Virus record (IMG/VR): IMGVR_UViG_3300027770_000027
Location: 1-64,000 of that record
Direction: 5' to 3' (one strand)
Length of the DNA stretch: 64,000 nt
The notes beneath the pieces were generated by a model. It searched no databases and was not told the DNA's origin. It was given only the letters and a program-made list of their open reading frames with translations. The first letter of the stretch is position 1, and each line of letters begins with the position of its first letter. A program made the position numbers and the translations under genes. Shown piece by piece: positions 1 to 64,000 of the stretch.

Positions 1-542
1 TAAGTACCTATATAAGGTACTTCAGTTAATAAGTCTAAATATTTTGTAGTATATACCCATATTTTAGAATGTTCATCTCGAAGCCTCATTGAGTTACACA
101 CTCCACAAGGAATTCTTGGATCCACGGCAGCAACAGCAGCTGCTATACCCTGACTTTGAATGTTAGATGCAATTGTTTGAAGTTGCTCAGCTGCCTGTCT
201 TTCAGCAGCGGTTTGAGTGCCTATGTTAATCGCAACACGGCCACCAATAGAAGTATATACATCTCTTTGAATTTTAACAATTTTATCACCCAATACGGAT
301 TCAAAATAATTCTTATTAGCATTGATGGAAGTATCTGAAGGAGATTCCATTCGAATGGTTCCGCCAGCTCCTAACTTGAGATAAGAACCGTCATTTTGTG
401 ACAATTGAACAGATGAGGTGTCTACTTGGGCATTTGGAGAATTTCCAACATCCTGTTTATTGGTATGAAATCTTAAAGTGCCTGCAGCACCCTTAATTTC
501 ATCTGTTTTTACTGAATTATTTCCTACATTGACATCAGCCAT
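1..542 (-). CDS. gp5 C-terminal/needle-like beta-helix protein (partial, runs off the window edge; not in ORF track)
   Basis: Hand translation from ATG 542 is open to position 1: MADVNVGNN...SVQLSQNDGSYLKLGAGGTIRMESPSDTSINANKNNFESVLGDKIVKIQRDVYTSIGG..., resembling gp5/VgrG C-terminal repeats; GATAAATA late-type motif upstream. Confidence 0.6.
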   Translation of the reverse strand, partial: MADVNVGNNSVKTDEIKGAAGTLRFHTNKQDVGNSPNAQVDTSSVQLSQNDGSYLKLGAGGTIRMESPSDTSINANKNYFESVLGDKIVKIQRDVYTSIGGRVAINIGTQTAAERQAAEQLQTIASNIQSQGIAAAVAAVDPRIPCGVCNSMRLRDEHSKIWVYTTKYLDLLTEVPYIGT

Positions 543-578: not shown

Positions 579-2387
579 CTAAAGACCTACATTTTTGCTT
601 AAAACTTTTTGAGAAGCCAGGAAGGCTTCTTCATTTGTTAATGGGTTTGAAGCTATAGACGTATAATAATCCACCAACACTTGTTTTGAAGGATCCGTGG
701 CCGCTTGTTGTTTTGTAGTGACAATTAAATTACTCAATTCTTTAGAAGTAATAATATCTGGAGCATAATCTCCCTTGCTACCAGGGGTTAGTGCCGCATA
801 TACCAAATTACCATCCACATCCACTGCCCTGGCAGTTTGATTTTTAGCACCATCCCATGATTTTAAATTTGCCATAACCTTATCCGGTGACATGGGAATT
901 AAGGCTGACACCAAATTAGAAGATTTGGAAAGTTCATCAGTAACAGCTGCCGAACTACCAATCGCAGGAACTTCGCCCGGTGATGTGTTACTAACTGAGG
1001 TGTCCGTTGTTTGTCCATTATTTTGAGTAATTGTCGCACCAGAAGAGGGAGAGGTAGGAGAAGTGCTTCCTTGATTAGGAGCATTTTGAGAAGCAACCGG
1101 ACCCGGAGTTCCTACAGGAACTTGAACATTTCCTTGATCAGTTCTACCCGCCGCCCCTGGTTCCGCTACTGCTGCAAAATATACTGGTCTCTGAGGATCT
1201 CCTCCCAAGAAAAATACATAAACCATATTACCCGGAGACGGTGTAGAATTTACACCATGTGGAGTTCTCATGTCATGGGGAGCCGCCGGAGATGTGGTGT
1301 CTATTGCGTGAGATTTATCGTGAGATAAAGCAGTATTGCCTCCAGCTGTAGTGGCCGGACCACTATTAGAAGAAGATCCCTTAGTAGCGGTGCTCATGCT
1401 GCTAGGATCTCTTTGTCCCGCTAAAGCATTTAGGGTATTAGCAGCATATCCTCGGCTCATTCCAAGGCGACTATTTCCAGTACCAGCTTGAATTACATTA
1501 TTACCAGGTTTAGCCATCATGGCTTCACAATATGCTAAATTTATTCTAGCAGATGTAACCGGGTCTCTTAGTTCTTCTGGAGAATAAACTCGGGCTTCTA
1601 CTCCATATCTAGCAAAAATAGTTGGATAAGCCTTTCCAAAATCTCGTGCGGTGTAGGGCGATAAACTATAAGGGCCGTATGATCCACCAGGGTCATTTAA
1701 ATTTTGTGCCTCTGGTCCATAAAGTTGATTACCAGTTTCATAATATGGCACTTTGCCCATAAATTTAGCCCAAGATTCTGGAGTATTATCCAGCCCAAAT
1801 CTCTCAGCATCTCTTGGAAGGTTATTGGTTAATCCCGAACCACATTCTTTAATAATTTGAAGATTTAAATCAACCATGTCCTGTGTTTGAACCACCTTTG
1901 TTGGTTGTTTATTATAAGTACCATCTGATACAGTGGGCTGTAGATACCCAGAGTTGCCCTTCACCTTGCCATTAGTATCTGCTGTGTTATTTTCTGGATT
2001 AGGATTACCTGCAGAGGGGTTTACAACAGAAGTTGGTTGGCCGTTGCGTAAGTCTTTATTTGCGACATTGGTAACTGTAGGGGCCCCAGTAGATGCTATC
2101 CGAGTACTTCCAGTTGCTGGATCTGAATAACTAGTTCCACCGCCCACTCCAAAATTTTGATTAGCACTTTCAGCCCATGGCAATAGTTTTTTAAGTCTTT
2201 CTAACACCGCTCCTTCTATGCTAGACAGGTCTCCCTGTCGAATACTGATATTAGAACCCTTTTCATTCCAACCTGTAAAAAGTGTTGTAGACAAATAAGG
2301 CACAAAAACTTGTACACGACCACGCGATTCTGGGTCGTTGCTATTAACAATTATACCTATATGGTTTCCGTATACTGGTTCACTCAT
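579..2387 (-). CDS. Baseplate hub gp5/VgrG-like N-terminal OB-fold protein with an inserted lytic-transglycosylase-like domain
   Basis: GIIVNSNDPESRGRVQVFVP (aa 11-30) and STPSPGNMVYVFFLGGDPQRPVYF (aa 381-404) are the two halves of the gp5 OB motif; SLT-like segment at aa ~175-325. Confidence 0.8.
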   Translation of the reverse strand: MSEPVYGNHIGIIVNSNDPESRGRVQVFVPYLSTTLFTGWNEKGSNISIRQGDLSSIEGAVLERLKKLLPWAESANQNFGVGGGTSYSDPATGSTRIASTGAPTVTNVANKDLRNGQPTSVVNPSAGNPNPENNTADTNGKVKGNSGYLQPTVSDGTYNKQPTKVVQTQDMVDLNLQIIKECGSGLTNNLPRDAERFGLDNTPESWAKFMGKVPYYETGNQLYGPEAQNLNDPGGSYGPYSLSPYTARDFGKAYPTIFARYGVEARVYSPEELRDPVTSARINLAYCEAMMAKPGNNVIQAGTGNSRLGMSRGYAANTLNALAGQRDPSSMSTATKGSSSNSGPATTAGGNTALSHDKSHAIDTTSPAAPHDMRTPHGVNSTPSPGNMVYVFFLGGDPQRPVYFAAVAEPGAAGRTDQGNVQVPVGTPGPVASQNAPNQGSTSPTSPSSGATITQNNGQTTDTSVSNTSPGEVPAIGSSAAVTDELSKSSNLVSALIPMSPDKVMANLKSWDGAKNQTARAVDVDGNLVYAALTPGSKGDYAPDIITSKELSNLIVTTKQQAATDPSKQVLVDYYTSIASNPLTNEEAFLASQKVLSKNVGL

Positions 2388-3817
2388 AAAGCTGGAGAAT
2401 ATATAGGTCTCTGAGGCAACATGGTATTTCTCAAATCATTTAATAACGCCGCCGCGTTTGCGCCACTAACACCACCCTTACTCACCATGTCTCCATAATA
2501 GACACTCTTATTTAAATCAAATACATTCTTAAAAGAGTTAACAGATCCTTGTATGGTCATGCTAGGTAACCCATTATGGTCATATGTGGCATTCCTGAAA
2601 GGACTACTAGAATTTAACAACCTATACATTAAAGGACTATTCAATTCTTTTGGTAACCAAGACAACGAACCCTTCACCAGTCCGGGGCCCGTCCGAGTCC
2701 AACTAGATTTTGAACTTATAGGTCCGTTACCGAATGTTTGTAATACTGTATTCAAATCTCCCAATTGAGCCCCTAGACCATATCTTTGAACGATAGCGTT
2801 TGCTATACTCAATCCTCTATTTTGACTAATTTTTCCAAAATTAAAACCCTTTAATAGATAACCCAAATAATGTTCTGGAATAGAACCTATACTCTTGATA
2901 AAAGCATTAAGTTTAGCAGCTTCTTTTGGGAAAAAGGTTCCTAATGTAGCACTGCCGGAGGAAAGGGTATTTGCTGTATCCATGATTTGAGCTCCGGTAT
3001 TAATCACAGTTTGTACAGAATTTAAAACTTTAAACAGACTATCAGAGCCACCAAAAATAGAAGCAAAAAAGGAAACATCATCTAAAATACTTTGTATCAT
3101 TTGAAAAATCATACAAATGATGGCAAGCCACATCATAACTCGAGGCCCTAAGAATTTATTCAAGAGAATTTGAGTCACCGTACCAACTATTTGATCTATC
3201 AGCAATTGCATACTCTGGAGTAACATAGAAACTCCTTTAAATATGTCGTTTATTGCTTCATAAAAACTTTGTACTGTACCAGTTATTGTGTGAATTGCTT
3301 CTGAAAATGCCCCCATTGCTCCGGTGGTGACTTTACTTAGATAACTATTTGCAAAAATATTTTCGGTATATTTTGTTAATTTAGAAAGCATGTTTGGCAC
3401 AAAAGTATTTGCCATATCTTGACACCCAGGAGGCAAACACACCTGTGGACCAGACACCCCATCAAAGTGTAACAATCCAGATAATCTACTGATCAAGCCT
3501 AGACGACCAACATCAAGAAAATGTTGTGCCTGTCCTAAAGTTGAATTGATAGTTTTCTTTAATAAATTACAAGCTTTTAAAATACCCCCATCTTTATCTA
3601 CAAAATCTTTATAAAAACTTTCAGATATTGTACACCCCGGAAAATGTGCAGTTATGGTAAAGGTATTTCCCAACGCCTCATGTCCTTTATTTAAAATAAA
3701 CAATGAAGCTGCATATTTATTAATATCACCATTACATCCTACATTTCTCAAGAGAATTAATTCATGACTCTTGAGACCAGAATTGTCTTCATAAAATTTG
3801 AAATTAAAATCTCCCAT
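2384..3817 (-). CDS. Hypothetical baseplate-region protein, helical with a hydrophobic segment
   Basis: 477-aa ORF overlapping gp5 by 4 nt; hydrophobic VMMWLAIICMIFQMIQSIL; GTAAATA upstream. Confidence 0.5.
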   Translation of the reverse strand: MGDFNFKFYEDNSGLKSHELILLRNVGCNGDINKYAASLFILNKGHEALGNTFTITAHFPGCTISESFYKDFVDKDGGILKACNLLKKTINSTLGQAQHFLDVGRLGLISRLSGLLHFDGVSGPQVCLPPGCQDMANTFVPNMLSKLTKYTENIFANSYLSKVTTGAMGAFSEAIHTITGTVQSFYEAINDIFKGVSMLLQSMQLLIDQIVGTVTQILLNKFLGPRVMMWLAIICMIFQMIQSILDDVSFFASIFGGSDSLFKVLNSVQTVINTGAQIMDTANTLSSGSATLGTFFPKEAAKLNAFIKSIGSIPEHYLGYLLKGFNFGKISQNRGLSIANAIVQRYGLGAQLGDLNTVLQTFGNGPISSKSSWTRTGPGLVKGSLSWLPKELNSPLMYRLLNSSSPFRNATYDHNGLPSMTIQGSVNSFKNVFDLNKSVYYGDMVSKGGVSGANAAALLNDLRNTMLPQRPIYSPAL

Positions 3818-3826
3818 ATAAAATAT

Positions 3827-4132
3827 TTACCACTTTCTTTCCGGACACTTTTCAACTTTTAATTTAGTTTTTATCTCCATATAACAGCCACATTTCTTAC
3901 AACGGTTGTTATTTTTTTCAAAAAAATCACATTTTTGACATATAGCCAATCGAGCATCTGCTACAGATGCTTCTACCATAATTCCATTTCCACTAATAAC
4001 TTGCTGTAAATTTTGACTAATACTGGAAACCGCATTTTTAATTACTTGAGAAGTAGATGGGTAGGAAACTGGAGCAGCTGGAATTTTATCTCGTATTTCT
4101 TCTAAATGTTTCTTTAGTTGTTCTCGAGTCAT
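3827..4132 (-). CDS. Cys-rich small phage protein (DUF6171-like)
   Basis: RLAICQKCDFF...RCKKCGCYMEIKTKL...CPERKW pattern. Confidence 0.6.
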   Translation of the reverse strand: MTREQLKKHLEEIRDKIPAAPVSYPSTSQVIKNAVSSISQNLQQVISGNGIMVEASVADARLAICQKCDFFEKNNNRCKKCGCYMEIKTKLKVEKCPERKW

Positions 4133-4140
4133 AACACTAT

Positions 4141-5745
4141 TTAATAGGCATTGTCGGTTTTACCATATATTGCAGAGAATGCATCTATTTTTGATGCAAC
4201 TATATCATTAATATATCCACCTTTTGTAAAAAAGTGTGTTATTTTAGTAATAATCCATTGGCCTAAAAATCGATCATCAAACGGATTTTGATCACCGCCG
4301 GCTGATGGTCTGTCTATATAAATAATTTTGCCAGGAGCCCTAAAAGTTAATCCAGGAACTTGAAATGCAATAGATTCACCTAGGAATATTAAATCTTTTA
4401 ACATATTCAATCCTGTATGATCCTTCAAATAAAATCTTTGAGGCAAGAATACATTACGAGTTGCTGCTCCAGATGCCTTTGTTTTATTAATATTCATTAA
4501 TATTTTATCTTGACTTTTATCGGGAGAATCTTTAAAATTATATAAACCCATTGCAGCCACTTTTTTAGTTTTTTCTAACACTTCTTTTAAGGTGTTATCT
4601 TTAAAGTGTATATTATACGTACCTGTAGAATGGTCATAGTTAAAAACCGGAGCGTTAACCATACGATGCTCATCTAAAGCTATCATAGGAGAATGTTGAT
4701 AATTTTTAATTATAGATGCCAGTGGAGATGTAAAGTTTTTAAGAGGATTATCAGAACCAGTTGTAAAATAACTTCTCTCTATATGTGGGGGAGAGTTAGA
4801 GTTACCACCTTCTTCTAATAATAATTTTTCTATTTGATTTTTTTCAGAATCTTTAATAAAAGATGACAATGAAACAAATTGCCAAGCTTTGGTTTTTATA
4901 GTTCTACCATAATCTAAAATAAGAGGACAATTATCTGCAGATTTGGAATTATTGACAATATATTGCATATCATCAATGACATTGGTATTTCCTGGAGATG
5001 TGTAGTAAATTGCTGATTCATTCTTAGGGGCTCCAGTATCCCAATTATTGGTATCTATTTTTGAAAGTGGTATATTTGGCTTATCAATGGATCCTTGTTC
5101 GTCATATGTTACACACAATTGAGCGGACTCACTCCCCATTTTTCCAGCTGCCTCTAAAAGAGACTTTAAGGCAGCTGGTCCTGTCATTGCTTTTTCAAAA
5201 TCTGTACCTCCTTGAGAAGAATCCATTCCAGTACTCCATTCAACCCTTCTTTCCTCTAAGACCTGTTTTTTAACATCTTTGAAATAATAGGCCCTCATTT
5301 TTTTGGCTGGATCATCTGTAATATCTTGTATATCATAAATTACAAAATCAAAAGACATGCTCCAGGGATCAAGTTTTTCAACCTGATTAGAGGTGGGCTC
5401 TTCTTGAGTGTATGGATAAATTTTAATACTAATTAAATTACGCCCGTCTGATCTCATTACATAAGGGGCTTTTATATCTAAAGATTTTTTACCATCAGAA
5501 CCGGCAGCAGAACTAAAGGCGGAAGCTCCTCTTTCTATAGCTTCACCCCAGTTTTCAATTACAATATAACCTTCTGTAGACCAATCATATAAAGTTTCTT
5601 CTATGGAAAGTTGATCAATAAACATGCACGGAACTGGCCATGGTTGGTAATTTGGAAGCATATTATACATCCAAACTTCAACCCAAAAATAATCAGCACC
5701 GATTTGATTTATAAACCGTTCTTTATTGATTACCGAGTTTGTCAT
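4141..5745 (-). CDS. Baseplate hub protein (gp27/late control D-like)
   Basis: C-terminal FQVPGLTFRAPGKIIYI...FLGQWIITKITHFFTKGGYINDIVASK is typical of hub proteins; baseplate context. Confidence 0.65.
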   Translation of the reverse strand: MTNSVINKERFINQIGADYFWVEVWMYNMLPNYQPWPVPCMFIDQLSIEETLYDWSTEGYIVIENWGEAIERGASAFSSAAGSDGKKSLDIKAPYVMRSDGRNLISIKIYPYTQEEPTSNQVEKLDPWSMSFDFVIYDIQDITDDPAKKMRAYYFKDVKKQVLEERRVEWSTGMDSSQGGTDFEKAMTGPAALKSLLEAAGKMGSESAQLCVTYDEQGSIDKPNIPLSKIDTNNWDTGAPKNESAIYYTSPGNTNVIDDMQYIVNNSKSADNCPLILDYGRTIKTKAWQFVSLSSFIKDSEKNQIEKLLLEEGGNSNSPPHIERSYFTTGSDNPLKNFTSPLASIIKNYQHSPMIALDEHRMVNAPVFNYDHSTGTYNIHFKDNTLKEVLEKTKKVAAMGLYNFKDSPDKSQDKILMNINKTKASGAATRNVFLPQRFYLKDHTGLNMLKDLIFLGESIAFQVPGLTFRAPGKIIYIDRPSAGGDQNPFDDRFLGQWIITKITHFFTKGGYINDIVASKIDAFSAIYGKTDNAY

Positions 5746-5746
5746 A

Positions 5747-6349
5747 TTATTGAGAAATAGAACTTACATTGTTTAATAATTGTGGAGTCATTTGATTATA
5801 TGCAAACGATACAGTTGATGTTAAAATGTTTTCATCTTGATGGGTAAAATTTATTTCAGATAATCCAGTTATAAAAGCATCTTTATATTTAAATGCCATT
5901 ATATTATTATTATATTCGTCTAAAGCATATAAAACAAAATCACAAACATAATCTGTAAATGGAATATTGGTAATATAATCTTTATCTTCAAACGGAGATG
6001 GTCTGCTTATCATGTCTGTGTGGCCGGTGGAGGAATCATTAAAAAGATTCAACCAATTCCAAAGTATCCAATAATTTTGATATCCGTTGTCAATTACGAG
6101 TTTTAAATCCAAAGGTGGCCACGGTCCTCTAGTGTTGCTAGAAGTATTATAACTTTGTCCACCAAATGGCAAATTTATAGGAGCAATCTTCATAGCAGGT
6201 ACTGGCGAACCAAAGACTGTAAATTGAATAGTGTTTGGGTTTTTTGCAGTCTTTAAAATGGGATCTAAAGTTTTCTTCAATGCCAATGGAATATCCATTA
6301 ACAAATTAAATTTGTCTATCCTAGCTTGATTTAATACGCTTTGATTCAT
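5747..6349 (-). CDS. Tail completion/sheath stabiliser (T4 gp3-like, tube fold)
   Basis: DKFNLLMDIP...VPAMKIAPINLPF...PLDLKLVIDNGYQNYWILWNWL. Confidence 0.7.
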   Translation of the reverse strand: MNQSVLNQARIDKFNLLMDIPLALKKTLDPILKTAKNPNTIQFTVFGSPVPAMKIAPINLPFGGQSYNTSSNTRGPWPPLDLKLVIDNGYQNYWILWNWLNLFNDSSTGHTDMISRPSPFEDKDYITNIPFTDYVCDFVLYALDEYNNNIMAFKYKDAFITGLSEINFTHQDENILTSTVSFAYNQMTPQLLNNVSSISQ

Positions 6350-34892: not shown

Positions 34893-35096
34893 TCATTTTA
34901 AACTGCTTTTCATAGATAGCAACTCTTTAATAGAATCTTCTAAGGACTGTGGAGTGGCTAACATACCCTGTTTTGGAGGTTCTACATATCCAATTTGCAT
35001 GTATTCCTCAGAGACAATATCATTCATTAGACTAAAGACATCGTGGGATAATTGTCTGATTAACGGATCTCCCTCTCTCTGGATGCCTCCCATCAT
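34893..35096 (-). CDS. Hypothetical protein
   Basis: Likely start ATG overlaps the endolysin stop (ATGA). Confidence 0.45.
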   Translation of the reverse strand: MMGGIQREGDPLIRQLSHDVFSLMNDIVSEEYMQIGYVEPPKQGMLATPQSLEDSIKELLSMKSSLK

Positions 35097-35704
35097 ACAC
35101 AAGATTCCATTAAAGTTGCTTCTGCATCTCTTCTTTTTAACAATCCGTCTAGACCCTGGCCTTCCCAAATTCTTTTCATAGCTCTAAATTCTGCTGCAAT
35201 TTTTTTATAATTTTTGTCTGGCACCAAAGCTCTAATATTTCGCATTTCTCTTCTTGAGTCTCCAGACATGCTAGTGCCTCTATTAAACACCAAAGAAACT
35301 ATAGTACCGTAAGCATCTTCATGCAATTCTGTTAAATCTGGAAAAGCCTTTTCTGCTGCTTTTGAAAATTTAGGCCAAGTCAAATCTTCAAAAATTTCTA
35401 CAGCATGATCCCAAGTAACAACAATACCCGCTTTTCTCAATTCTAATGTATAGTCTTTACCGCGTTGTTTTGTTTTGCCCGCTGCTCCTTGTATTAAGTG
35501 TATTTGATCTTCTGGTAAAAATTTAAATATAGATGCAATTTCTTGAGGATTATAATATGCGGTATCTATTCCGATTCCAATAGTAGGACCACTAGCTCCA
35601 CCAGGCCAAGTAAACCTTGAAAGTTTCTTTTCATAATAAGCCTTACCTCCACCAACTTCATATTCAAATAATAAATTTAAAGTATTTTTAGATGGTTTTT
35701 TCAT
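35093..35704 (-). CDS. Endolysin, pesticin-like / T4-lysozyme-fold muramidase
   Basis: FEYEVG...WPGGASGPTIGIGID...IVSLVFNRG...MKRIW...GLLKRRDAEA. Confidence 0.85.
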   Translation of the reverse strand: MKKPSKNTLNLLFEYEVGGGKAYYEKKLSRFTWPGGASGPTIGIGIDTAYYNPQEIASIFKFLPEDQIHLIQGAAGKTKQRGKDYTLELRKAGIVVTWDHAVEIFEDLTWPKFSKAAEKAFPDLTELHEDAYGTIVSLVFNRGTSMSGDSRREMRNIRALVPDKNYKKIAAEFRAMKRIWEGQGLDGLLKRRDAEATLMESCV

Positions 35705-39410: not shown

Positions 39411-39835
39411 TGGTGGAGGCGAGGGGAGTTGAACCCCTGTCCTGAAAACTTAGACTTTAGCGTCTACAATCATATTTTGCTAACATTATAGGGACAAAGG
39501 GTTGTTAGCTAGTTTTTAGTCTACCTGCTGGCGCGAAGTCTACCAGCTACTCTCGGCTTGTTTTTATTGAGCTTCACGATCTTACTCAAACCTACTTAGG
39601 TTACTCCAGAAATTTTAATAGGATCCATTTCTGTTTGTTAGGCTGCGAGCTCGTACATCTCTTCTTCTGCGAGGTAATCCTCGAAGTTGTTGATGATGTG
39701 GGTTGCTTCAGCTAAGAGTGCTTCTGTATTATCAGTTGCATTTATTTGTTTGTCCAGAGATTTTAACGAGGCCAACCAGACTTCCTCGGATTGCAACTAA
39801 AGTTTTCAGCGCTCAGTCGAAACCAATGCGCCCCC
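39411..39835 (-). ncRNA. ssrA: tmRNA
   Basis: 5' GGGGGCG pairs with 3' CGCCUCC-ACCA (G3.U70); GGUUUCGAC; T-arm GGGGUUCAACUCCCC; resume context AUAAAU-GCA; tag ORF 39739-39638 ending LAA*. Confidence 0.95.
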
Positions 39836-50836: not shown

Positions 50837-50913
50837 TGGTGCAATCGGCGGGATTCGAACCCGCGACCAACAGATTAGAAATCTGTTGCTCTATCCAGCT
50901 GAGCTACGATTGC
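50837..50913 (-). tRNA. tRNA-Arg(UCU)
   Basis: GCAATCG...ACAGA-TT-TCT-AA-TCTGT...GGTTCGAATCCC...CGATTGC-ACCA. Confidence 0.95.
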
Positions 50914-50923
50914 TTGTTAAAAA

Positions 50924-50998
50924 TGGAGCGGGTAGAGGGAATTGAACCCTCCTATCTAGTTTGGAAGACTAGGGCATTAGCCACTATGCTATACCCGC
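50924..50998 (-). tRNA. tRNA-Gly(UCC)
   Basis: GCGGGTA...CTAGT-CT-TCC-AA-ACTAG...GGGTTCAATTCCC...TACCCGC-TCCA. Confidence 0.95.
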
Positions 50999-50999
50999 A

Positions 51000-51073
51000 T
51001 GGCACGTCCTGAGGGAATCGAACTCTCATCAACGGTTTTGGAGACCGCAGTTTTACCATTAAACTAAAGACGC
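51000..51073 (-). tRNA. tRNA-Trp(CCA)
   Basis: GCGTCTT...GCGGT-CT-CCA-AA-ACCGT...GAGTTCGATTCCC...AGGACGT-GCCA. Confidence 0.93.
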
Positions 51074-59765: not shown

Positions 59766-60557
59766 TCAAACTTTAAAAAGCTTCTTTAATTTATACTCAG
59801 CTCTACTAGTTGGTATATTACTTAGATCATCTAATTCTTTTCTAGTGAATGGTGCTGCAGGGGTTGGGATTCCGTCATAGGTTCGAGCAATGTCCGGTAA
59901 GATTTCCTCTTCACAAAATAGACTGCCGGACATATGCCAAACATTCAAAGTCAGGGTCACTGCTTTAATCTTATCTTCCAGACTCTCAGCTCCAAACAAC
60001 AAACGAAAACAATAATCTATTCCCTTATAAGCCTCCGCGGCGATATTGGATAAGTTCACCCGCTCCAGGTCCTCTTCGGCATGTAACAAAAAACGCGGGG
60101 ACTTGGGATTATTAATATAGTCGCCCGTCAAATAATCTATCTTTTGGGAATCCTCAGGCCAGTCCAGTTGAGGCTGCGTGTGCCTCATTAAGCGGCCGGC
60201 AGGCATAGGGGTCACTCCCCTACAATCGAACTCACTTAAAAGAGCCCTTCTCGTTCGTCTTCCGACATGCGCATCCATTATAGTAATAAGATATAATTTA
60301 ATCCATTCATAATGGTTTCTTATTTCTCTATCCACCTGTTGCTTCACTTGGTCCTGTTCGTCTCCATAGTGATAATCGGATAAGAGATATTTCATCATTA
60401 CATATTCATGAAATATATGGAGTCTCTTTAATGCCGTCCCCTTAAACTCTTTTACGATCTTCTGGATAACGGGATAATAACCGCGGTACAAGGGGGACAG
60501 CCGGATAGTGACAAGCAGCTTCTTCCTAAAGGCCATTACATCTGTTGTGGAACTCAT
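59766..60557 (-). CDS. Hypothetical protein
   Basis: 263-aa ORF; LNVWHMSG motif not assigned. Confidence 0.55.
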   Translation of the reverse strand: MSSTTDVMAFRKKLLVTIRLSPLYRGYYPVIQKIVKEFKGTALKRLHIFHEYVMMKYLLSDYHYGDEQDQVKQQVDREIRNHYEWIKLYLITIMDAHVGRRTRRALLSEFDCRGVTPMPAGRLMRHTQPQLDWPEDSQKIDYLTGDYINNPKSPRFLLHAEEDLERVNLSNIAAEAYKGIDYCFRLLFGAESLEDKIKAVTLTLNVWHMSGSLFCEEEILPDIARTYDGIPTPAAPFTRKELDDLSNIPTSRAEYKLKKLFKV

Positions 60558-60762
60558 CTAATACATACCGCGCCAGGTACAGGGGTCTATAGGGTATATA
60601 GGGGGTACTCTTATATAGTAGAACAGCGGATTGCCCCCACCCCCCGGCTCCGGCGTGATACCCCTATTACCTGTTTTTGAACAGCCGGGGTCCTTGCATA
60701 CCACGGTGCGAAAAATCCCCAGAGGTCCCTCTCCGCCCCTGGGGCTTGACTCGCCGCCTATG

Positions 60763-61149
60763 CTACTCGAGGCCGTTCTCCAGGAGGCTGTCGATGAAGC
60801 CGTACTCACATCCTAGGTCGAAGTCGAGGAACCGATTGTCACCAAGGGTCTCCTGGGCCTCGTGGAGCCACCGGATTGCCATCGCAACGTCCTGGGCCCC
60901 ATACTGCATGAGGACTCGGATCTGCTCCCGAGCTGCCTGCTCAGCCCTAGCGGTGCGTTGCTTCTCCTCTTCTACCTGGACATAGTACTCCCGCTCGAGC
61001 CGAGCCAGCATTCCCTTCAGCTCCTGCACCGTGACCTTGGTACCGTAGATCCACCGAGCCTTCACCCCGTAGACGTCCTTGTGGAAGTCACAGTACTCAT
61101 CCATCAGCTGCTCGAGTTCGGTGCGGGCGATCGTCATGTCATTCATCAT
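60763..61149 (-). CDS. Early-type hypothetical protein
   Basis: DFHKDVYGVKAR; own promoter; ATGATG start. Confidence 0.65.
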   Translation of the reverse strand: MMNDMTIARTELEQLMDEYCDFHKDVYGVKARWIYGTKVTVQELKGMLARLEREYYVQVEEEKQRTARAEQAAREQIRVLMQYGAQDVAMAIRWLHEAQETLGDNRFLDFDLGCEYGFIDSLLENGLE

Positions 61150-61187
61150 GTTTATATATTAGAGGAGAGAGTGGGGAACCTCAAGGA

Positions 61188-61412
61188 CTATCGGACCGTT
61201 GCGAGGTCCCAATCGTCGAGTCGGACCACATCCTTATTGGCTAGCTCGACGTCCACTGTGACCCGGTTCACCTTCACCACGGTGCCTGTGTGGCGGATGT
61301 TCTCGGTCTGCCGGCCGTCGAAGAACGTGGTCGTCCAGTTGATCGTCTGGCCGATGGTGAACTGATCCTTGAGGGTGGTCTTGGCGGTGTGCTTCTTAAT
61401 TACTTTCATCAT
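61188..61412 (-). CDS. Small SH3-like early protein, paralogue 1
   Basis: FFDGR...TGTVVKVNRVTVDV. Confidence 0.65.
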   Translation of the reverse strand: MMKVIKKHTAKTTLKDQFTIGQTINWTTTFFDGRQTENIRHTGTVVKVNRVTVDVELANKDVVRLDDWDLATVR

Positions 61413-61450
61413 GTATATATCTTAAGGGTTTATTGGGGGAACTGCAACAC

Positions 61451-61687
61451 TTACCAAGGCCGAGTATTAACCTTCACCTGACGGAGGTCTAGGCGGACTA
61501 CATCCTGGTTCGGCAGGTACACGTCCACGGTGACCTTGTTCATCTTGCACACGGTGCCGGTGTAAGGGACATACTCACCGGTCCGGCCGTCGAAGAAACG
61601 AATTACCCAGTCGACTACCTGTCCGGTGCGGAACTTGGGAAGCTGTTCGGTGTGGCGCTTGATTGTTCTCATTGCTGTTCTCATCAT
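61451..61687 (-). CDS. Small SH3-like early protein, paralogue 2
   Basis: FFDGR...TGTVCKMNKVTVDV. Confidence 0.65.
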   Translation of the reverse strand: MMRTAMRTIKRHTEQLPKFRTGQVVDWVIRFFDGRTGEYVPYTGTVCKMNKVTVDVYLPNQDVVRLDLRQVKVNTRPW

Positions 61688-61725
61688 GTATATATCTTAA
61701 GGGTTTCTGGAGGGAACTGCAAGCA

Positions 61726-62022
61726 CTACCGGTTGATCGTTGTGGTCCTATTCTGCAGGAGGAGGTCGAGCTCCTTCAGCTGCTTGAGGGTCGTGAGGTT
61801 CTCCTTCTGTACCAGCGCCAGGCCTTCCACGAAGTCGGTGTTCAGCCAGTCAGTCTTGAAGGCGAGTCCGTTCACCCCGAAGCCTAGGTGTGTGGTTCCT
61901 TCTTCCTCATCGGTGAGGATACCGAGGACGCGGAAGTCGATGGCCTTCGGGTTCTTGGCTTCGAGCGCCTGGAGGACTGCTACGCGGACTTCGGTCTTGG
62001 TGTTCATCTTGTTTTTCATCAT
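61726..62022 (-). CDS. Early hypothetical protein
   Basis: Own promoter; ATGATG start. Confidence 0.6.
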   Translation of the reverse strand: MMKNKMNTKTEVRVAVLQALEAKNPKAIDFRVLGILTDEEEGTTHLGFGVNGLAFKTDWLNTDFVEGLALVQKENLTTLKQLKELDLLLQNRTTTINR

Positions 62023-62060
62023 GTAATAATATTAACGGACGTTGGGGGGAACTGCAAGGA

Positions 62061-62333
62061 CTACTTCCGAGCTCTGGCCTTCTTGAACTGAGCCCTCACC
62101 TTTGCAAAGGTCTCGTCCTGCTCGGGCTCCGGGTAGAACCAGTTCCAGGTGTTGCGGACTCCCTTGACCAGGAGCTCGAGGAGGCACAGAGGGATGAGGA
62201 TCGGGGAGAGCACCACGGTGAGCAGAGCGGTGACAACGATCGTGGTGATACAGGCGCTCGCTAGTGCGTTGATCGTGGACTGGTGGCGGAGGCGGAAAGC
62301 GAAGGCTTCGGTGGGTGTCATGGTGTCTTTCAT
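62061..62333 (-). CDS. Early membrane protein
   Basis: Long hydrophobic segment; own promoter. Confidence 0.6.
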   Translation of the reverse strand: MKDTMTPTEAFAFRLRHQSTINALASACITTIVVTALLTVVLSPILIPLCLLELLVKGVRNTWNWFYPEPEQDETFAKVRAQFKKARARK

Positions 62334-62375
62334 CTTGTATATATCTTAGGTGAGGAGAGGGGGAACCGCACGGAC

Positions 62376-62468
62376 TTAGTTGAGGTCGAAGAGGTAGATA
62401 AAGGTCGCGCCGAGGCCTACGAGAAGGACGAAGTGAACTGTCACGGCTACTACTTGGAACGTTGTCAT
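62376..62468 (-). CDS. 30-aa single-TM peptide (below ORF-track cutoff)
   Basis: MTTFQVVAVTVHFVLLVGLGATFIYLFDLN; own promoter. Confidence 0.6.
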   Translation of the reverse strand: MTTFQVVAVTVHFVLLVGLGATFIYLFDLN

Positions 62469-62500
62469 TGTTAAGATATTAAAGGATGTACTGGGGAACC

Positions 62501-62695
62501 TCAAGCGAAGACTTCGTGGGCGATCCCGGACTCTGGCTGCTCGTAGGACTCGATGAAGAACCTCTTAGAGTCCTTCCGTTGCCAGATCCACTCCTCCGCG
62601 GACTTCCGATCGAAGAAGACTCCGATGAACTCATTGCCGCCGTTGGAGAAGGCTCCGGCTTCCTTGAACACGATATGGACTTGGGTCTTGGTCAT
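62501..62695 (-). CDS. Early hypothetical protein
   Basis: VHIVF...FIGVFFDRKSAEEW; own promoter. Confidence 0.6.
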   Translation of the reverse strand: MTKTQVHIVFKEAGAFSNGGNEFIGVFFDRKSAEEWIWQRKDSKRFFIESYEQPESGIAHEVFA

Positions 62696-62733
62696 AGTTC
62701 TATTATGGGTTAGGAACTGGGGAAGCTCAACGC

Positions 62734-62898
62734 TTATCGTCCGAGAGCAGGCAGGGGCTTCTGAACAGTCACCCAGTGGAGGATCTCGGTCGGGACTCGG
62801 AACACCTTAGCTGCCTGCTCTGCGTCCTCGCGCTTGGCGTAAGCTCCGAGGAAAGCCTGATTGTCTTCGCGAACGAGAATGTAAACGGTGTCTTTCAT
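62734..62898 (-). CDS. Early hypothetical protein
   Basis: Start MKDTVYILVRED; promoter occupies the ORF-track 5' extension; FLGAYAKREDAEQ. Confidence 0.6.
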   Translation of the reverse strand: MKDTVYILVREDNQAFLGAYAKREDAEQAAKVFRVPTEILHWVTVQKPLPALGR

Positions 62899-62930
62899 TG
62901 TTAATATCTTAGTGGATCTAACGGGGAAGC

Positions 62931-63128
62931 TCAAGCCTCAAGAGCGAGGACGTTGAACGGGACCTGGACTACCTGATTGCTGGGAAGTTCCACGCAGACA
63001 TCCAGCTCGGTGTTCTTCTCCAGGCGAGCGGCCACGGACATGGCCTGCCAGAGAGTCTCGTGGGATGTGTGGATCCGGTAGGGCTTGTTGGGGTAGAGAG
63101 GGGAGCGAGTGAGGACGTTGTAGGTCAT
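62931..63128 (-). CDS. Early hypothetical protein
   Basis: 65-aa ORF co-oriented in the array. Confidence 0.55.
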   Translation of the reverse strand: MTYNVLTRSPLYPNKPYRIHTSHETLWQAMSVAARLEKNTELDVCVELPSNQVVQVPFNVLALEA

Positions 63129-63140
63129 GGTGATTGGGAA

Positions 63141-63242
63141 TTAGAGGTTATGCTTAGCTGCTACGTAGGTCACGAAGACTGCGGCGACTCCGGTGAGAGC
63201 GACTCCGGTGAACATCAGGATGGGAAGGACTGTTTCAATCAT
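63141..63242 (-). CDS. 33-aa single-TM peptide (below ORF-track cutoff)
   Basis: MIETVLPILMFTGVALTGVAAVFVTYVAAKHNL; own promoter. Confidence 0.6.
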   Translation of the reverse strand: MIETVLPILMFTGVALTGVAAVFVTYVAAKHNL

Positions 63243-63281
63243 GTAATAATCTTAGCACATGACTGGGGGAACCTCCCGCCC

Positions 63282-63530
63282 TCAATAGTGCCGTGTCTTT
63301 GACTCTGTCTTGACTCGCTCATACTCTGCTCGCGTCCTCTCGTCTTCCAAAGAGAGGAGTAGCCGGTGGAGTTGGCCTGCAGCAACCTGATAGGCCTTCT
63401 CGGCGGTGTAGGCTTCCCGGCGAAGGGCATTGACGGCATCCAGCTTATCTGTCTTGTGAGCAGAGAGACTGTCCAGGAGGTCGAGTTGTTGGCGGACGCC
63501 GGGGTTATTGAGGATGTCTTGGTTATTCAT
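63282..63530 (-). CDS. Early coiled-coil protein
   Basis: 82-aa helical ORF. Confidence 0.55.
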   Translation of the reverse strand: MNNQDILNNPGVRQQLDLLDSLSAHKTDKLDAVNALRREAYTAEKAYQVAAGQLHRLLLSLEDERTRAEYERVKTESKTRHY

Positions 63531-63554
63531 AGATTTATTGGTTGTGGGGAAAGA

Positions 63555-63731
63555 TTAGTGGCGGTTCCGGGGATTGATTCCCTTCCCGGCGTTCTCCTGC
63601 CGGTGGATGATGACCCCGGCGATCACGAAGAGGACAATCACAGGCCAGAAGTTCACGGCGAGCTTGAGGAAGACCTGGCCAATGAGGGAAAGCTTGTCTG
63701 TGAGGGTCATGTCGAAGTGTTCTTGAATCAT
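63555..63731 (-). CDS. 58-aa membrane peptide (below ORF-track cutoff)
   Basis: MIQEHFDMTLTDKLSLIGQVFLKLAVNFWPVIVLFVIAGVIIHRQ...; CATAAT 6 nt upstream. Confidence 0.6.
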   Translation of the reverse strand: MIQEHFDMTLTDKLSLIGQVFLKLAVNFWPVIVLFVIAGVIIHRQENAGKGINPRNRH

Positions 63732-63788
63732 GTTTCTATTATGGCTGGGAATGCTGGGAAGGGAACGGCTGACTTTAACATTGAGGTC

Positions 63789-63971
63789 CTACTTGCACAG
63801 GCAGTAGACTCCGAAGAGGGCCAGCCCTCCCACGATGAGGCCGTGGTTCCCCAGGAACGCGAGACATAGGGTTCCCAGGGCGGTTCCGGCCATCGCCATT
63901 CCTAGGAAGGCGGACGGGCATAGGAACCAGAGGGCTGCGAGAACGGCGAGGAACATCATTACTTTCATCAT
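63789..63971 (-). CDS. 60-aa hydrophobic membrane protein
   Basis: Almost entirely hydrophobic; own promoter; ATGATG start. Confidence 0.6.
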   Translation of the reverse strand: MMKVMMFLAVLAALWFLCPSAFLGMAMAGTALGTLCLAFLGNHGLIVGGLALFGVYCLCK

Positions 63972-64000
63972 GTATATATCTTACAGGACTTGAGGGGGAA

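What the first reader, a model, noticed from the sequence alone, without database searches (positions are those of the whole stretch)
1413..1865. Lytic-transglycosylase-like domain inserted inside the gp5 OB fold
Seen: the two halves of the OB motif (aa 11-80 and 378-407) are about 300 aa apart. Inside is WAKFMGKVPYY-E217-TG...GSYGPYSLS...LRDPVTSARINLAYC, which follows the SLT pattern (catalytic E, GLxQ-like, L.DP..N), with Q replaced by S. Known: T4 gp5 carries a T4L-type lysozyme after, not within, the OB fold. Inference: an independently acquired wall-degrading domain on flexible S/T/N linkers within an OB loop.
Basis: partly seen in the sequence, partly recalled or inferred. Interest (0 to 1): 0.6.

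Follow-up and report, generated by a model that had tools for sequence, protein, structure and literature searches.

The report
Lysozyme-like domain looped into spike OB fold
The tail-spike protein of this uncultured 227-kb T4-like phage has a cell-wall-cutting (lysozyme/SLT-like) domain on long floppy linkers inserted in the middle of its small OB barrel; this is a new layout of a known phage entry tool, and it recurs in many uncultured phages.

Summary
ORF 579..2387(-) encodes a 602-aa central-spike protein. Its Phage_base_V OB fold is built from two pieces, aa 1-76 and 381-409. In the AlphaFold model the two pieces superpose together on the contiguous ~80-aa OB domains of the P1, A-1(L), CIS, VgrG, pyocin and Mu spikes.

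Two caveats:
- This copy is the most divergent of the 26 relatives compared. It has ES->ET, G-[LIV]-x-Q->G-P-Y-S and a 3-aa insertion after the Glu, so activity and chemistry (lytic transglycosylase or hydrolase) are unproven.
- The layout is not unique to this phage. The split OB is family-wide, and the same loop elsewhere holds this domain, NlpC/P60, M15/VanY or DUF2272 domains.

No member was found in 50,697 GenBank phage records.

Verdict: a real feature and a new topological variant of the known tail-associated lysin. Interest is moderate.

The parts
579..2387 (-). Central-spike gene (P0001, 602 aa plus stop). It lies in a tail module after the tube-like, hub-like, DUF6171 and tape-measure-like genes.
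   Evidence: The same gene order is seen in relatives L002 and L003.
2160..2387 (-). N-terminal part of the OB fold, aa 1-76 (strands 8-15, 25-28, 71-74; helix 59-68).
   Evidence: PF04717 positions 2-27 at aa 10-35. OBN HMM at aa 1-81, 1.6e-31. pLDDT 66-91. Structural match to spike OB domains.
1911..2159 (-). Linker 1, aa 77-159: 83 residues, N/G/T/S-rich, predicted disordered.
   Evidence: pLDDT about 30. 71% of residues are S/T/N/G/P/Q/A.
1398..1910 (-). Lysozyme-superfamily (SLT/GH23-like, DslA-like) domain, aa 160-330.
1737..1739 (-). Codon of E217, the predicted catalytic general acid. It sits at the C-terminal end of helix 203-218 (the 'ES' motif, here E-T).
   Evidence: Invariant in 26 of 26 family domains. 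Aligned to DslA E143 and human lysozyme E35. Helix position. ES motif described in PMC7511926.
1665..1676 (-). Motif II, aa 238-241: G-P-Y-S where the family and SLT/C-lysozymes have G-[LIV]-[FYLM]-Q.
   Evidence: P and S are unique to this protein among the 26 aligned domains. The GLMQ motif is said to be essential for active-site architecture (PMC550655).
1248..1397 (-). Linker 2, aa 331-380: S/T/A-rich, predicted disordered.
1161..1247 (-). C-terminal part of the OB fold, aa 381-409 (strands 388-393 and 401-406).
   Evidence: Mu_Gp45 model at aa 375-403. OBC HMM at aa 373-410, 1.4e-20. pLDDT 83-85. Structural match.
747..1160 (-). Linker 3, aa 410-547: long low-complexity S/A/G/T/P stretch. 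No beta-helix was detected.
   Evidence: pLDDT below 50. Composition. No Pfam or PHROG hit.
582..746 (-). Small C-terminal three-helix domain, aa 548-602, role unknown.
   Evidence: Helices 548-564, 566-580 and 585-600 at pLDDT about 66-70. Only generic helical matches.
35093..35704 (-). Separate T4L-type (GH24, PF00959) lysozyme gene, the likely endolysin. The spike domain is therefore a second, different muramidase-like module.
   Evidence: PF00959 at 30 bits, above the cut-off, in a 203-206-aa frame.

Best explanation
P0001 is the OB-fold central-spike subunit of a contractile tail (the gp5 / gpV / VgrG position). A peptidoglycan-cleaving module has been looped into its OB barrel.

Shown in silico:
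- The chain makes the first three strands and the helix of the OB (aa 1-76).
- It then leaves the barrel through an 83-residue disordered linker and folds into a 170-residue lysozyme-superfamily domain of the SLT/GH23-DslA type.
- That domain has its general-acid Glu (E217) at the end of the central helix.
- The chain returns through a 51-residue linker and completes the barrel (aa 381-409).

Inferred:
- The spike is a trimer, so three enzyme domains hang on double tethers beside the tail tip.
- When the sheath contracts and the tip crosses the outer membrane, these domains reach the murein layer. They cut MurNAc-GlcNAc bonds locally and open a hole for the tail tube.
- Because the domain is a loop of the OB plug, it stays attached to the spike/hub and is not released.
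- No conserved second acid is seen at the DslA E154 position. One-acid (lytic-transglycosylase-type) chemistry is therefore somewhat more likely than hydrolysis.
- The unusual motif II (G-P-Y-S) suggests altered sugar recognition or lowered activity.

The same OB loop is a general insertion site in this spike family. It holds different wall-degrading domains in different phages.
For: Spike identity and context:
- PF04717 scores above its cut-off.
- Tube, tape-measure-like, sheath and T4 baseplate genes lie nearby, and the synteny is conserved.

One OB from two pieces:
-.

Lysozyme-like insert:
- 16 relatives in an exhaustive phmmer search, with Pfam SLT above cut-off on the matched parts.
- The family profile hits DslA and C-lysozyme with the catalytic Glu aligned.
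- Confident domain model.
- E217 is invariant.

Disordered linkers.

A dedicated entry enzyme is plausible, because a separate GH24 lysozyme gene exists.

Recurrent architecture:
- The OB-N / insert / OB-C arrangement is found in all 27 family proteins, with gaps of roughly 80-580 aa.
- This LYS domain sits in the insert of at least 11 distinct proteins, including IMG/VR contigs L010-L013.
- Other inserts are NlpC/P60, DUF2272, M15 and VanY.

Precedent: tail-tip puncturing devices and tape measures commonly carry lysin domains (PMC6116005; PMC3004832; PMC9024508).
Against: - No experiment exists. There is only one phage genome with this exact sequence (cluster of 3, identical over the 602 aa compared).
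- Pfam SLT and PHROGs do not hit this copy directly.
- This copy alone has T after the Glu, P and S in motif II, and a 3-aa insertion next to the Glu.
- It sits on a terminal branch about five times the median length (1.68 versus 0.35). That is compatible with relaxed constraint or loss of activity.
- The AYNxG motif of classical SLT is absent.
- Foldseek E-values are only about 1e-3.
- No beta-helix needle follows the OB in this chain. How the spike is completed is unknown.
- Model coordinates could not be inspected. The geometry of the active site and the direction in which the loop leaves the barrel are not verified.
Confidence: 0.65

Rival explanations
1. The inserted domain has the lysozyme fold but is catalytically dead or very weak. 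It would act as a peptidoglycan-binding or anchoring module, holding the tail tip at the murein layer, or as a purely structural decoration of the spike.
For: Three otherwise invariant or near-invariant active-site positions are changed only in this copy: S218T, L/I239P and Q241S. There is also a 3-aa insertion right after the catalytic Glu. The terminal branch is long. GLMQ and the residue after the Glu are described as essential for active-site architecture (PMC550655). [quoted passage not shown]
Against: The general-acid Glu itself is kept, whereas known inactive members replace it (PMC7511926). E followed by T is accepted in the PECACE branch of GH23 (PMC550655). The fold is predicted with high confidence around the motif. 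The invariant GGS and G238 are retained.
Confidence: 0.25
2. The domain is a true hydrolase (a lysozyme of the DslA or goose type, using two acids), not a lytic transglycosylase. It may be tuned to a modified (for example de-N-acetylated) peptidoglycan of its host.
For: DslA is the closest solved structure by both profile and fold. DslA is an inverting hydrolase specific for GlcNAc-deacetylated murein (PMC7511926). A D/E before the GGS turn (D232 here) is kept in nearly all members. P0001 has E226 on the same strand region. Some family members carry the DslA-like R-Y-W loop. The changed motif II could alter N-acetyl recognition.
Against: In the profile alignment the position aligned to DslA E154 is mostly T/V in the family and not an acid in P0001 (the nearest acid, E226, is not conserved). 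D232 aligns with DslA D158, a structural residue. The loop equivalent to DslA's Y-W is G-Y in P0001. Loop alignments at 15% identity are uncertain.
Confidence: 0.25
3. The split is an artefact, arising from a mis-assembly, a chimeric contig or a fused gene call that joins an OB protein and a separate lysin gene.
For: The sequence is metagenome-derived. One cluster member (P0039) is a fused call of the upstream gene with this one.
Against: The frame is uninterrupted, with the OB C half downstream of the insert in the same frame. The 602-aa sequence recurs identically within P0039, on another contig. The same N half / insert / C half order is seen in 27 different proteins from many samples and in IMG/VR contigs.
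Confidence: 0.02

Closest known systems
Phage T4 gp5 (tail-associated lysozyme of the cell-puncturing device)
   Same: It is a trimeric central-spike protein of a contractile tail. It has an N-terminal OB fold and a lysozyme-superfamily domain held on long linkers, used to open the murein during entry (PMC3004832). The phage here is a distant T4-like phage by terminase, baseplate and sheath.
   Different: In T4 the domains are in series: OB (about aa 1-129), then GH24 T4L-type lysozyme, then beta-helix, with a maturation cleavage. The helix blocks the enzyme until it dissociates. Here the enzyme is a loop inside the OB barrel, belongs to the SLT/GH23-DslA branch, and no beta-helix follows in the chain. 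The OB matches Pfam Phage_base_V.
Bdellovibrio bacteriovorus DslA (Bd0314; PDB 6TA9)
   Different: Identity is only about 15%. DslA's second catalytic Glu (E154) and its Y-W loop are not matched in P0001. DslA is a secreted predator enzyme, not a virion part.
Family-1 lytic transglycosylases (Pfam SLT PF01464; Slt70, MltE, MltC) and phage virion SLT domains (P1 Sit tape measure, phiKZ gp144)
   Different: P0001 itself gets no Pfam SLT hit. Motif II is G-P-Y-S, not G-L-M-Q, and AYNxG is absent. In P1 the SLT sits in the tape measure, and the P1 spike OB is contiguous and has no enzyme.
Spike OB domains of P2 gpV / Mu gp45 / P1 gp5 / VgrG / PVC and AFP spikes
   Same: Same OB fold and same Pfam family. 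Structural alignments show 13-30% identity over 71-84 residues.
   Different: In all of these solved spikes the OB is one contiguous stretch of about 75-95 residues. Here it is interrupted by 304 residues. 'Evolved' VgrGs add effectors at the C terminus, not inside the OB (my own knowledge, not tested here).

Membership tests
Phage_base_V (PF04717) spike OB fold | Pfam score above the gathering cut-off | tested here: met
   27.4 bits against a cut-off of 23.8, in two stretches.
Phage_base_V (PF04717) spike OB fold | Five-stranded OB barrel superposable on solved spike OB domains | tested here: met
Phage_base_V (PF04717) spike OB fold | Gene sits in a contractile-tail or baseplate module | tested here: met
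   Tube, tape-measure-like, sheath and T4 baseplate genes are in the window. Synteny is conserved.
Lysozyme superfamily (GH23-like fold) | Two-lobed fold with a central helix ending in E-S/T and a beta-sheet floor | tested here: met
Pfam SLT (PF01464), family-1 lytic transglycosylases | Direct Pfam hit above the cut-off | tested here: not met
   No hit even at E 10 for aa 150-340, and none in the genome at E 0.01. The link is only transitive, through homologues P0025, 26, 34, 35, 36 and 37.
Pfam SLT (PF01464), family-1 lytic transglycosylases | The three-motif signature ES, GLMQ, AYNxG | tested here: not met
   The first motif is E-T (S/T is accepted). G-P-Y-S stands in place of GLMQ. There is no AYNxG; a G-x-R-G-Y loop is present instead (motifs from PMC8517470 and PMC550655).
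Pfam SLT (PF01464), family-1 lytic transglycosylases | Produces 1,6-anhydro-MurNAc products | not testable with these tools
   Needs enzymology.
DslA-type deacetylation-specific lysozyme | Second catalytic Glu on beta-1 (E154) facing the ES Glu | tested here: not met
   The aligned position is T/V in the family, and the P0001 residue there is not an acid. The alignment is uncertain in the loops.
DslA-type deacetylation-specific lysozyme | Y-W loop that excludes acetylated GlcNAc | tested here: not met
   P0001 has G-Y. Some relatives (P0022, 34, 36, 37, L011) have R/K-Y-W.
T4 gp5-type tail lysozyme | GH24 (Phage_lysozyme) domain in series between the OB and a C-terminal triple beta-helix | tested here: not met
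   The domain is not GH24. The PF00959 hit lies elsewhere in the genome, at 35093-35704. The enzyme is inside the OB. No Gp5_trimer_C or beta-helix was found in P0001.

The most novel reading that the evidence does not exclude
The beta3-beta4 loop of the spike OB fold may be a general, evolvable 'socket' on which uncultured myoviruses display and swap wall-degrading cargo (SLT/DslA-like, NlpC/P60, M15/VanY, DUF2272). This would be the phage counterpart of the C-terminal effector extensions of evolved VgrGs. The odd active site of this copy (E-T, G-P-Y-S, extra NQL) would then reflect retargeting to a chemically modified host peptidoglycan, not decay.
Probability: 0.25. Interest if true: 0.65.

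Novelty: new variant of a known kind. Interest (0 to 1): 0.45.

Why it matters
Tail-associated lysins are how many phages pass the murein layer. T4 gp5, with its domains in series, is the only structurally understood example on a contractile-tail spike.

This finding shows a second, topologically different solution: the enzyme is a double-tethered loop of the OB plug, and it comes from a different lysozyme branch. The solution is used by a whole family of uncultured phages, with interchangeable enzyme cargo. It has no representative among 50,697 deposited phage genomes at tblastn sensitivity.

The finding gives a defined insertion site that could be tested for engineering spike-displayed enzymes. 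It also gives a set of natural lysin domains, some DslA-like, to test for substrate specificity.

It does not change the general picture of phage entry.

Tried and rejected
Searches that gave nothing useful:
- Direct family scans of the insert (Pfam at E 10, PHROGs) and of the C-terminal 183 aa gave nothing.
- The word-index search restricted to aa 150-340 found only the protein itself.
- phmmer of the whole protein against PDB gave only a spurious 0.48 hit to homoserine O-acetyltransferase.
- tblastn of P0001, its insert, P0006 and P0022 against GenBank phages gave no match.
- Foldseek against BFVD gave only weak rows (E above 0.04), although these were consistently LT/GEWL/SLT proteins.
- The Pfam HMD hit on the downstream ORF (24.4 bits) lies in an A/Q-rich stretch, and I regard it as spurious.

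Ideas considered and rejected:
- An assembly or gene-call artefact. The architecture recurs in 27 proteins.
- The idea that the two OB halves are unrelated motifs. They form one barrel in the model and match contiguous OB domains.

Things I could not do:
- I could not find the needle. The downstream roughly 710-aa gene and its 662-aa homologue have no Pfam, PHROG or PDB sequence match.
- I could not inspect model coordinates, so no distances in the active site are given.

Complex prediction, the reads tools and the metagenome and genome scans were not used, because no claim here rests on them.

Full report
**What the window is.**
The window is bases 1-64000 of a 227,352-bp IMG/VR virus record that CheckV rates complete. 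It carries:
- a T4-type large terminase, a tail-tube-like protein, a sheath and T4-type baseplate proteins;
- a class I ribonucleotide reductase;
- three tRNAs and a tmRNA.

The terminase is at most 37% identical to any deposited phage; the best matches are phiM9, pf16 and Cr30, followed by cyanophages. This is therefore an uncultured, distant T4-like large myovirus of about 35% G+C.

**The gene.**
ORF 579..2387 on the minus strand encodes a 602-aa protein, P0001. It follows, in the same direction:
- a tube-like gene (5747-6349);
- a 534-aa tail protein (4141-5745);
- a small Cys-rich DUF6171 protein (3827-4132);
- a 477-aa tape-measure-like protein (2384-3817).

The same gene order occurs around its nearest relatives, P0002 and P0003, in other metagenomes. 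All the quoted strings are present, with E217 at window 1737-1739.

**The OB fold is split.**
- Pfam Phage_base_V passes its cut-off (27.4 against 23.8 bits) as two stretches. aa 10-35 match model positions 2-27. aa 375-403 match the C-terminal half of the related Mu Gp45 model.
- Across the family, the N half always matches model positions 1-33 and the C half positions 40-75.
- HMMs that I built from the homologues place the halves at aa 1-81 and 373-410 in P0001.
- The full-length AlphaFold model was made with 27 sequences. Its overall pLDDT is 58 because half of the chain is disorder. It is confident for aa 8-76 and 381-407 and gives strands 8-15, 25-28, 71-74, 388-393 and 401-406 plus helix 59-68.

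The two pieces therefore form one barrel in the model. The interruption lies between the third and fourth strands.

**What the insert is.**
aa 77-159 and 331-380 are predicted disordered (pLDDT about 30), and 71% of their residues are S/T/N/G/P/Q/A. Between them, aa 160-330 is globular.

This globular part has no direct Pfam or PHROG hit and no word-index relatives, so I used the exhaustive search. It returned 16 relatives, the best at E 9.5e-15. In six of them the matched stretch is a Pfam SLT hit above the cut-off, and five are themselves split Phage_base_V proteins.

Further evidence on the domain:
- A profile of the 17 domains hits human-type C lysozyme (1.4e-4) and Bdellovibrio DslA (1.7e-4) in the PDB. 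The invariant Glu is aligned to lysozyme E35 and DslA E143.
- With this alignment AlphaFold gives pLDDT 89.4 and pTM 0.86.
- Foldseek ranks DslA first (TM 0.63), followed by MltE, Slt and MltC.
- The ESM Atlas best match is an SLT cluster (TM 0.66).
- Language-model neighbours include SLT clusters.

**Active site.**
In 26 non-identical family domains the Glu is invariant. It lies at the C-terminal end of helix 203-218, as the ES motif does in the superfamily (PMC7511926). P0001 is the odd one out at three places:
- It alone has T after the Glu. Ser or Thr is accepted in the PECACE branch of GH23 (PMC550655).
- It alone has P and S in the S-x-G-[LIV]-[FYLM]-Q strand, giving G-P-Y-S.
- It alone has three extra residues directly after E-T-G.

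In a maximum-likelihood tree its terminal branch is 1.68 against a median of 0.35. GLMQ is described as essential for active-site architecture. Activity is therefore plausible, because the acid is kept, but it is not assured.

The family has no conserved acid at the position aligned with DslA's second catalytic Glu, E154. The conserved D before the GGS turn aligns with DslA D158, a structural residue. This favours one-acid, transglycosylase-type chemistry, but the alignment is weak in those loops. The AYNxG motif of classical SLT is absent. The corresponding loop resembles DslA's G-x-R-Y-W, but reads R-G-Y in P0001.

**The layout is a family trait.**
All 27 homologues of the OB halves are split. 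The gaps run from about 80 aa (P0019) to about 580 aa (P0010).
- The LYS domain fills the gap in P0001, P0006 (a cluster of 18 sequences), P0007, P0014, P0022, P0024, P0033 and P0035, and in IMG/VR contigs L010, L011/L012 and L013.
- Other gaps hold NlpC/P60 (P0013), DUF2272 together with LYS (P0014), and M15 or VanY peptidase together with LYS (P0024, P0027).
- The nearest OB relatives, P0002 and P0003 (about 50% identical in the N half and syntenic), have an unrelated, unidentified insert.
- The LYS domain also occurs outside spikes. It is found in giant proteins with M15 or M23 domains, with a PG_binding_1 domain, and as small stand-alone proteins.
- The tree needs at least three changes between the OB context and other contexts.

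The domain is therefore a mobile module and the OB loop is a recurrent landing site. Several members with short gaps carry a T4 gp5-type beta-helix after the OB (P0020 and P0021, weakly P0010 and P0022). P0001 does not.

**How it probably works.**
By analogy with T4 gp5, the trimeric OB plugs the hub at the tube tip. In T4 gp5 an OB domain, a GH24 lysozyme on two long linkers and a beta-helix are in series, and the enzyme digests murein after the tip has crossed the outer membrane (PMC3004832).

The three LYS domains would then hang on double tethers and cut glycan strands locally during penetration (inference). Because the enzyme is a loop of the OB, it would remain attached to the plug. No proteolytic maturation is needed to separate it from a needle, and no T4-like steric inhibition by a helix in the same chain can be assumed.

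The genome has a separate GH24 lysozyme (window 35093-35704), the likely endolysin. This fits a dedicated entry role for the spike domain.

**Comparison with what is known.**
Virion-associated lysins on puncturing devices and tape measures are well known (PMC6116005). P1 carries its SLT domain in the tape measure Sit, and its spike is an enzyme-free OB plus helix (PMC9024508).

I found no description of an enzyme inserted inside the spike OB fold in the papers searched. No member of this family was found in 50,697 GenBank phage records. Both are limited searches, not proof of absence.

I file the feature as a new variant of a known kind. Confidence is about 0.9 that the architecture is real, and about 0.6-0.65 that the domain is an active glycan-strand-cleaving enzyme.

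Noticed in passing
window 1-131 and record end (L004 3223-3353 = G000 227222-227352): The first 131 bases of the record are repeated at its end, 130 of 131 identical (the mismatch is at base 5). The record classed as 'linear' is therefore probably a circular assembly or a terminally redundant genome.
   Followed up: partly
window 3-542 (-) plus L004 1632-3353 (-): The gene downstream of the spike is cut by the record ends. Joined across the repeat, it is about 710 aa (662 aa in relatives). It is Cys-rich, and part of it looks repetitive and strand-like by eye. It has no Pfam, PHROG or PDB sequence match. It is a candidate for the missing needle, and it was not folded.
   Followed up: partly
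window 2384-2430 (-), junction of the tape-measure-like gene and the spike gene: The two genes overlap by ATGA. On another metagenome contig a 1078-aa protein (P0039) is called. It fuses the tape-measure-like protein to the complete spike, after a frame change about 10 codons before the stop. This could be a sequencing error, a natural variant or a frameshift product; I could not tell which.
   Followed up: partly
window 39411-39835 (-): A phage-encoded tmRNA (Rfam 132.6 bits, full length). ARAGORN predicts an unusually long, acidic tag peptide of 33 residues.
   Followed up: no
window 60500-64000: G+C jumps to 53-54%, against 32-41% in the rest of the window. The block holds only small ORFs (about 60-130 aa), mostly on the minus strand. 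It could be a foreign insert, a chimeric join or an unusual early-gene block.
   Followed up: no
window 35093-35704 (-): A separate T4L-type lysozyme (PF00959, 30 bits), the likely endolysin. It belongs to a different lysozyme family from the spike insert.
   Followed up: partly
window 3827-4132 (-): A small Cys-rich DUF6171 / phrog_13558 protein conserved between the hub-like and tape-measure-like genes in this phage and its relatives. Its role in the tail is unknown.
   Followed up: no
relatives P0022, P0034, P0036, P0037, L011 (LYS domains): Some members of the LYS family carry an R/K-Y-W loop like the Y-W motif of DslA, which is proposed to exclude acetylated GlcNAc. These may be DslA-like enzymes in phage virion proteins.
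   Followed up: no
window 50837-51073 (-): A cluster of three tRNA genes: Arg-TCT, Gly-TCC and Trp-CCA.
   Followed up: no
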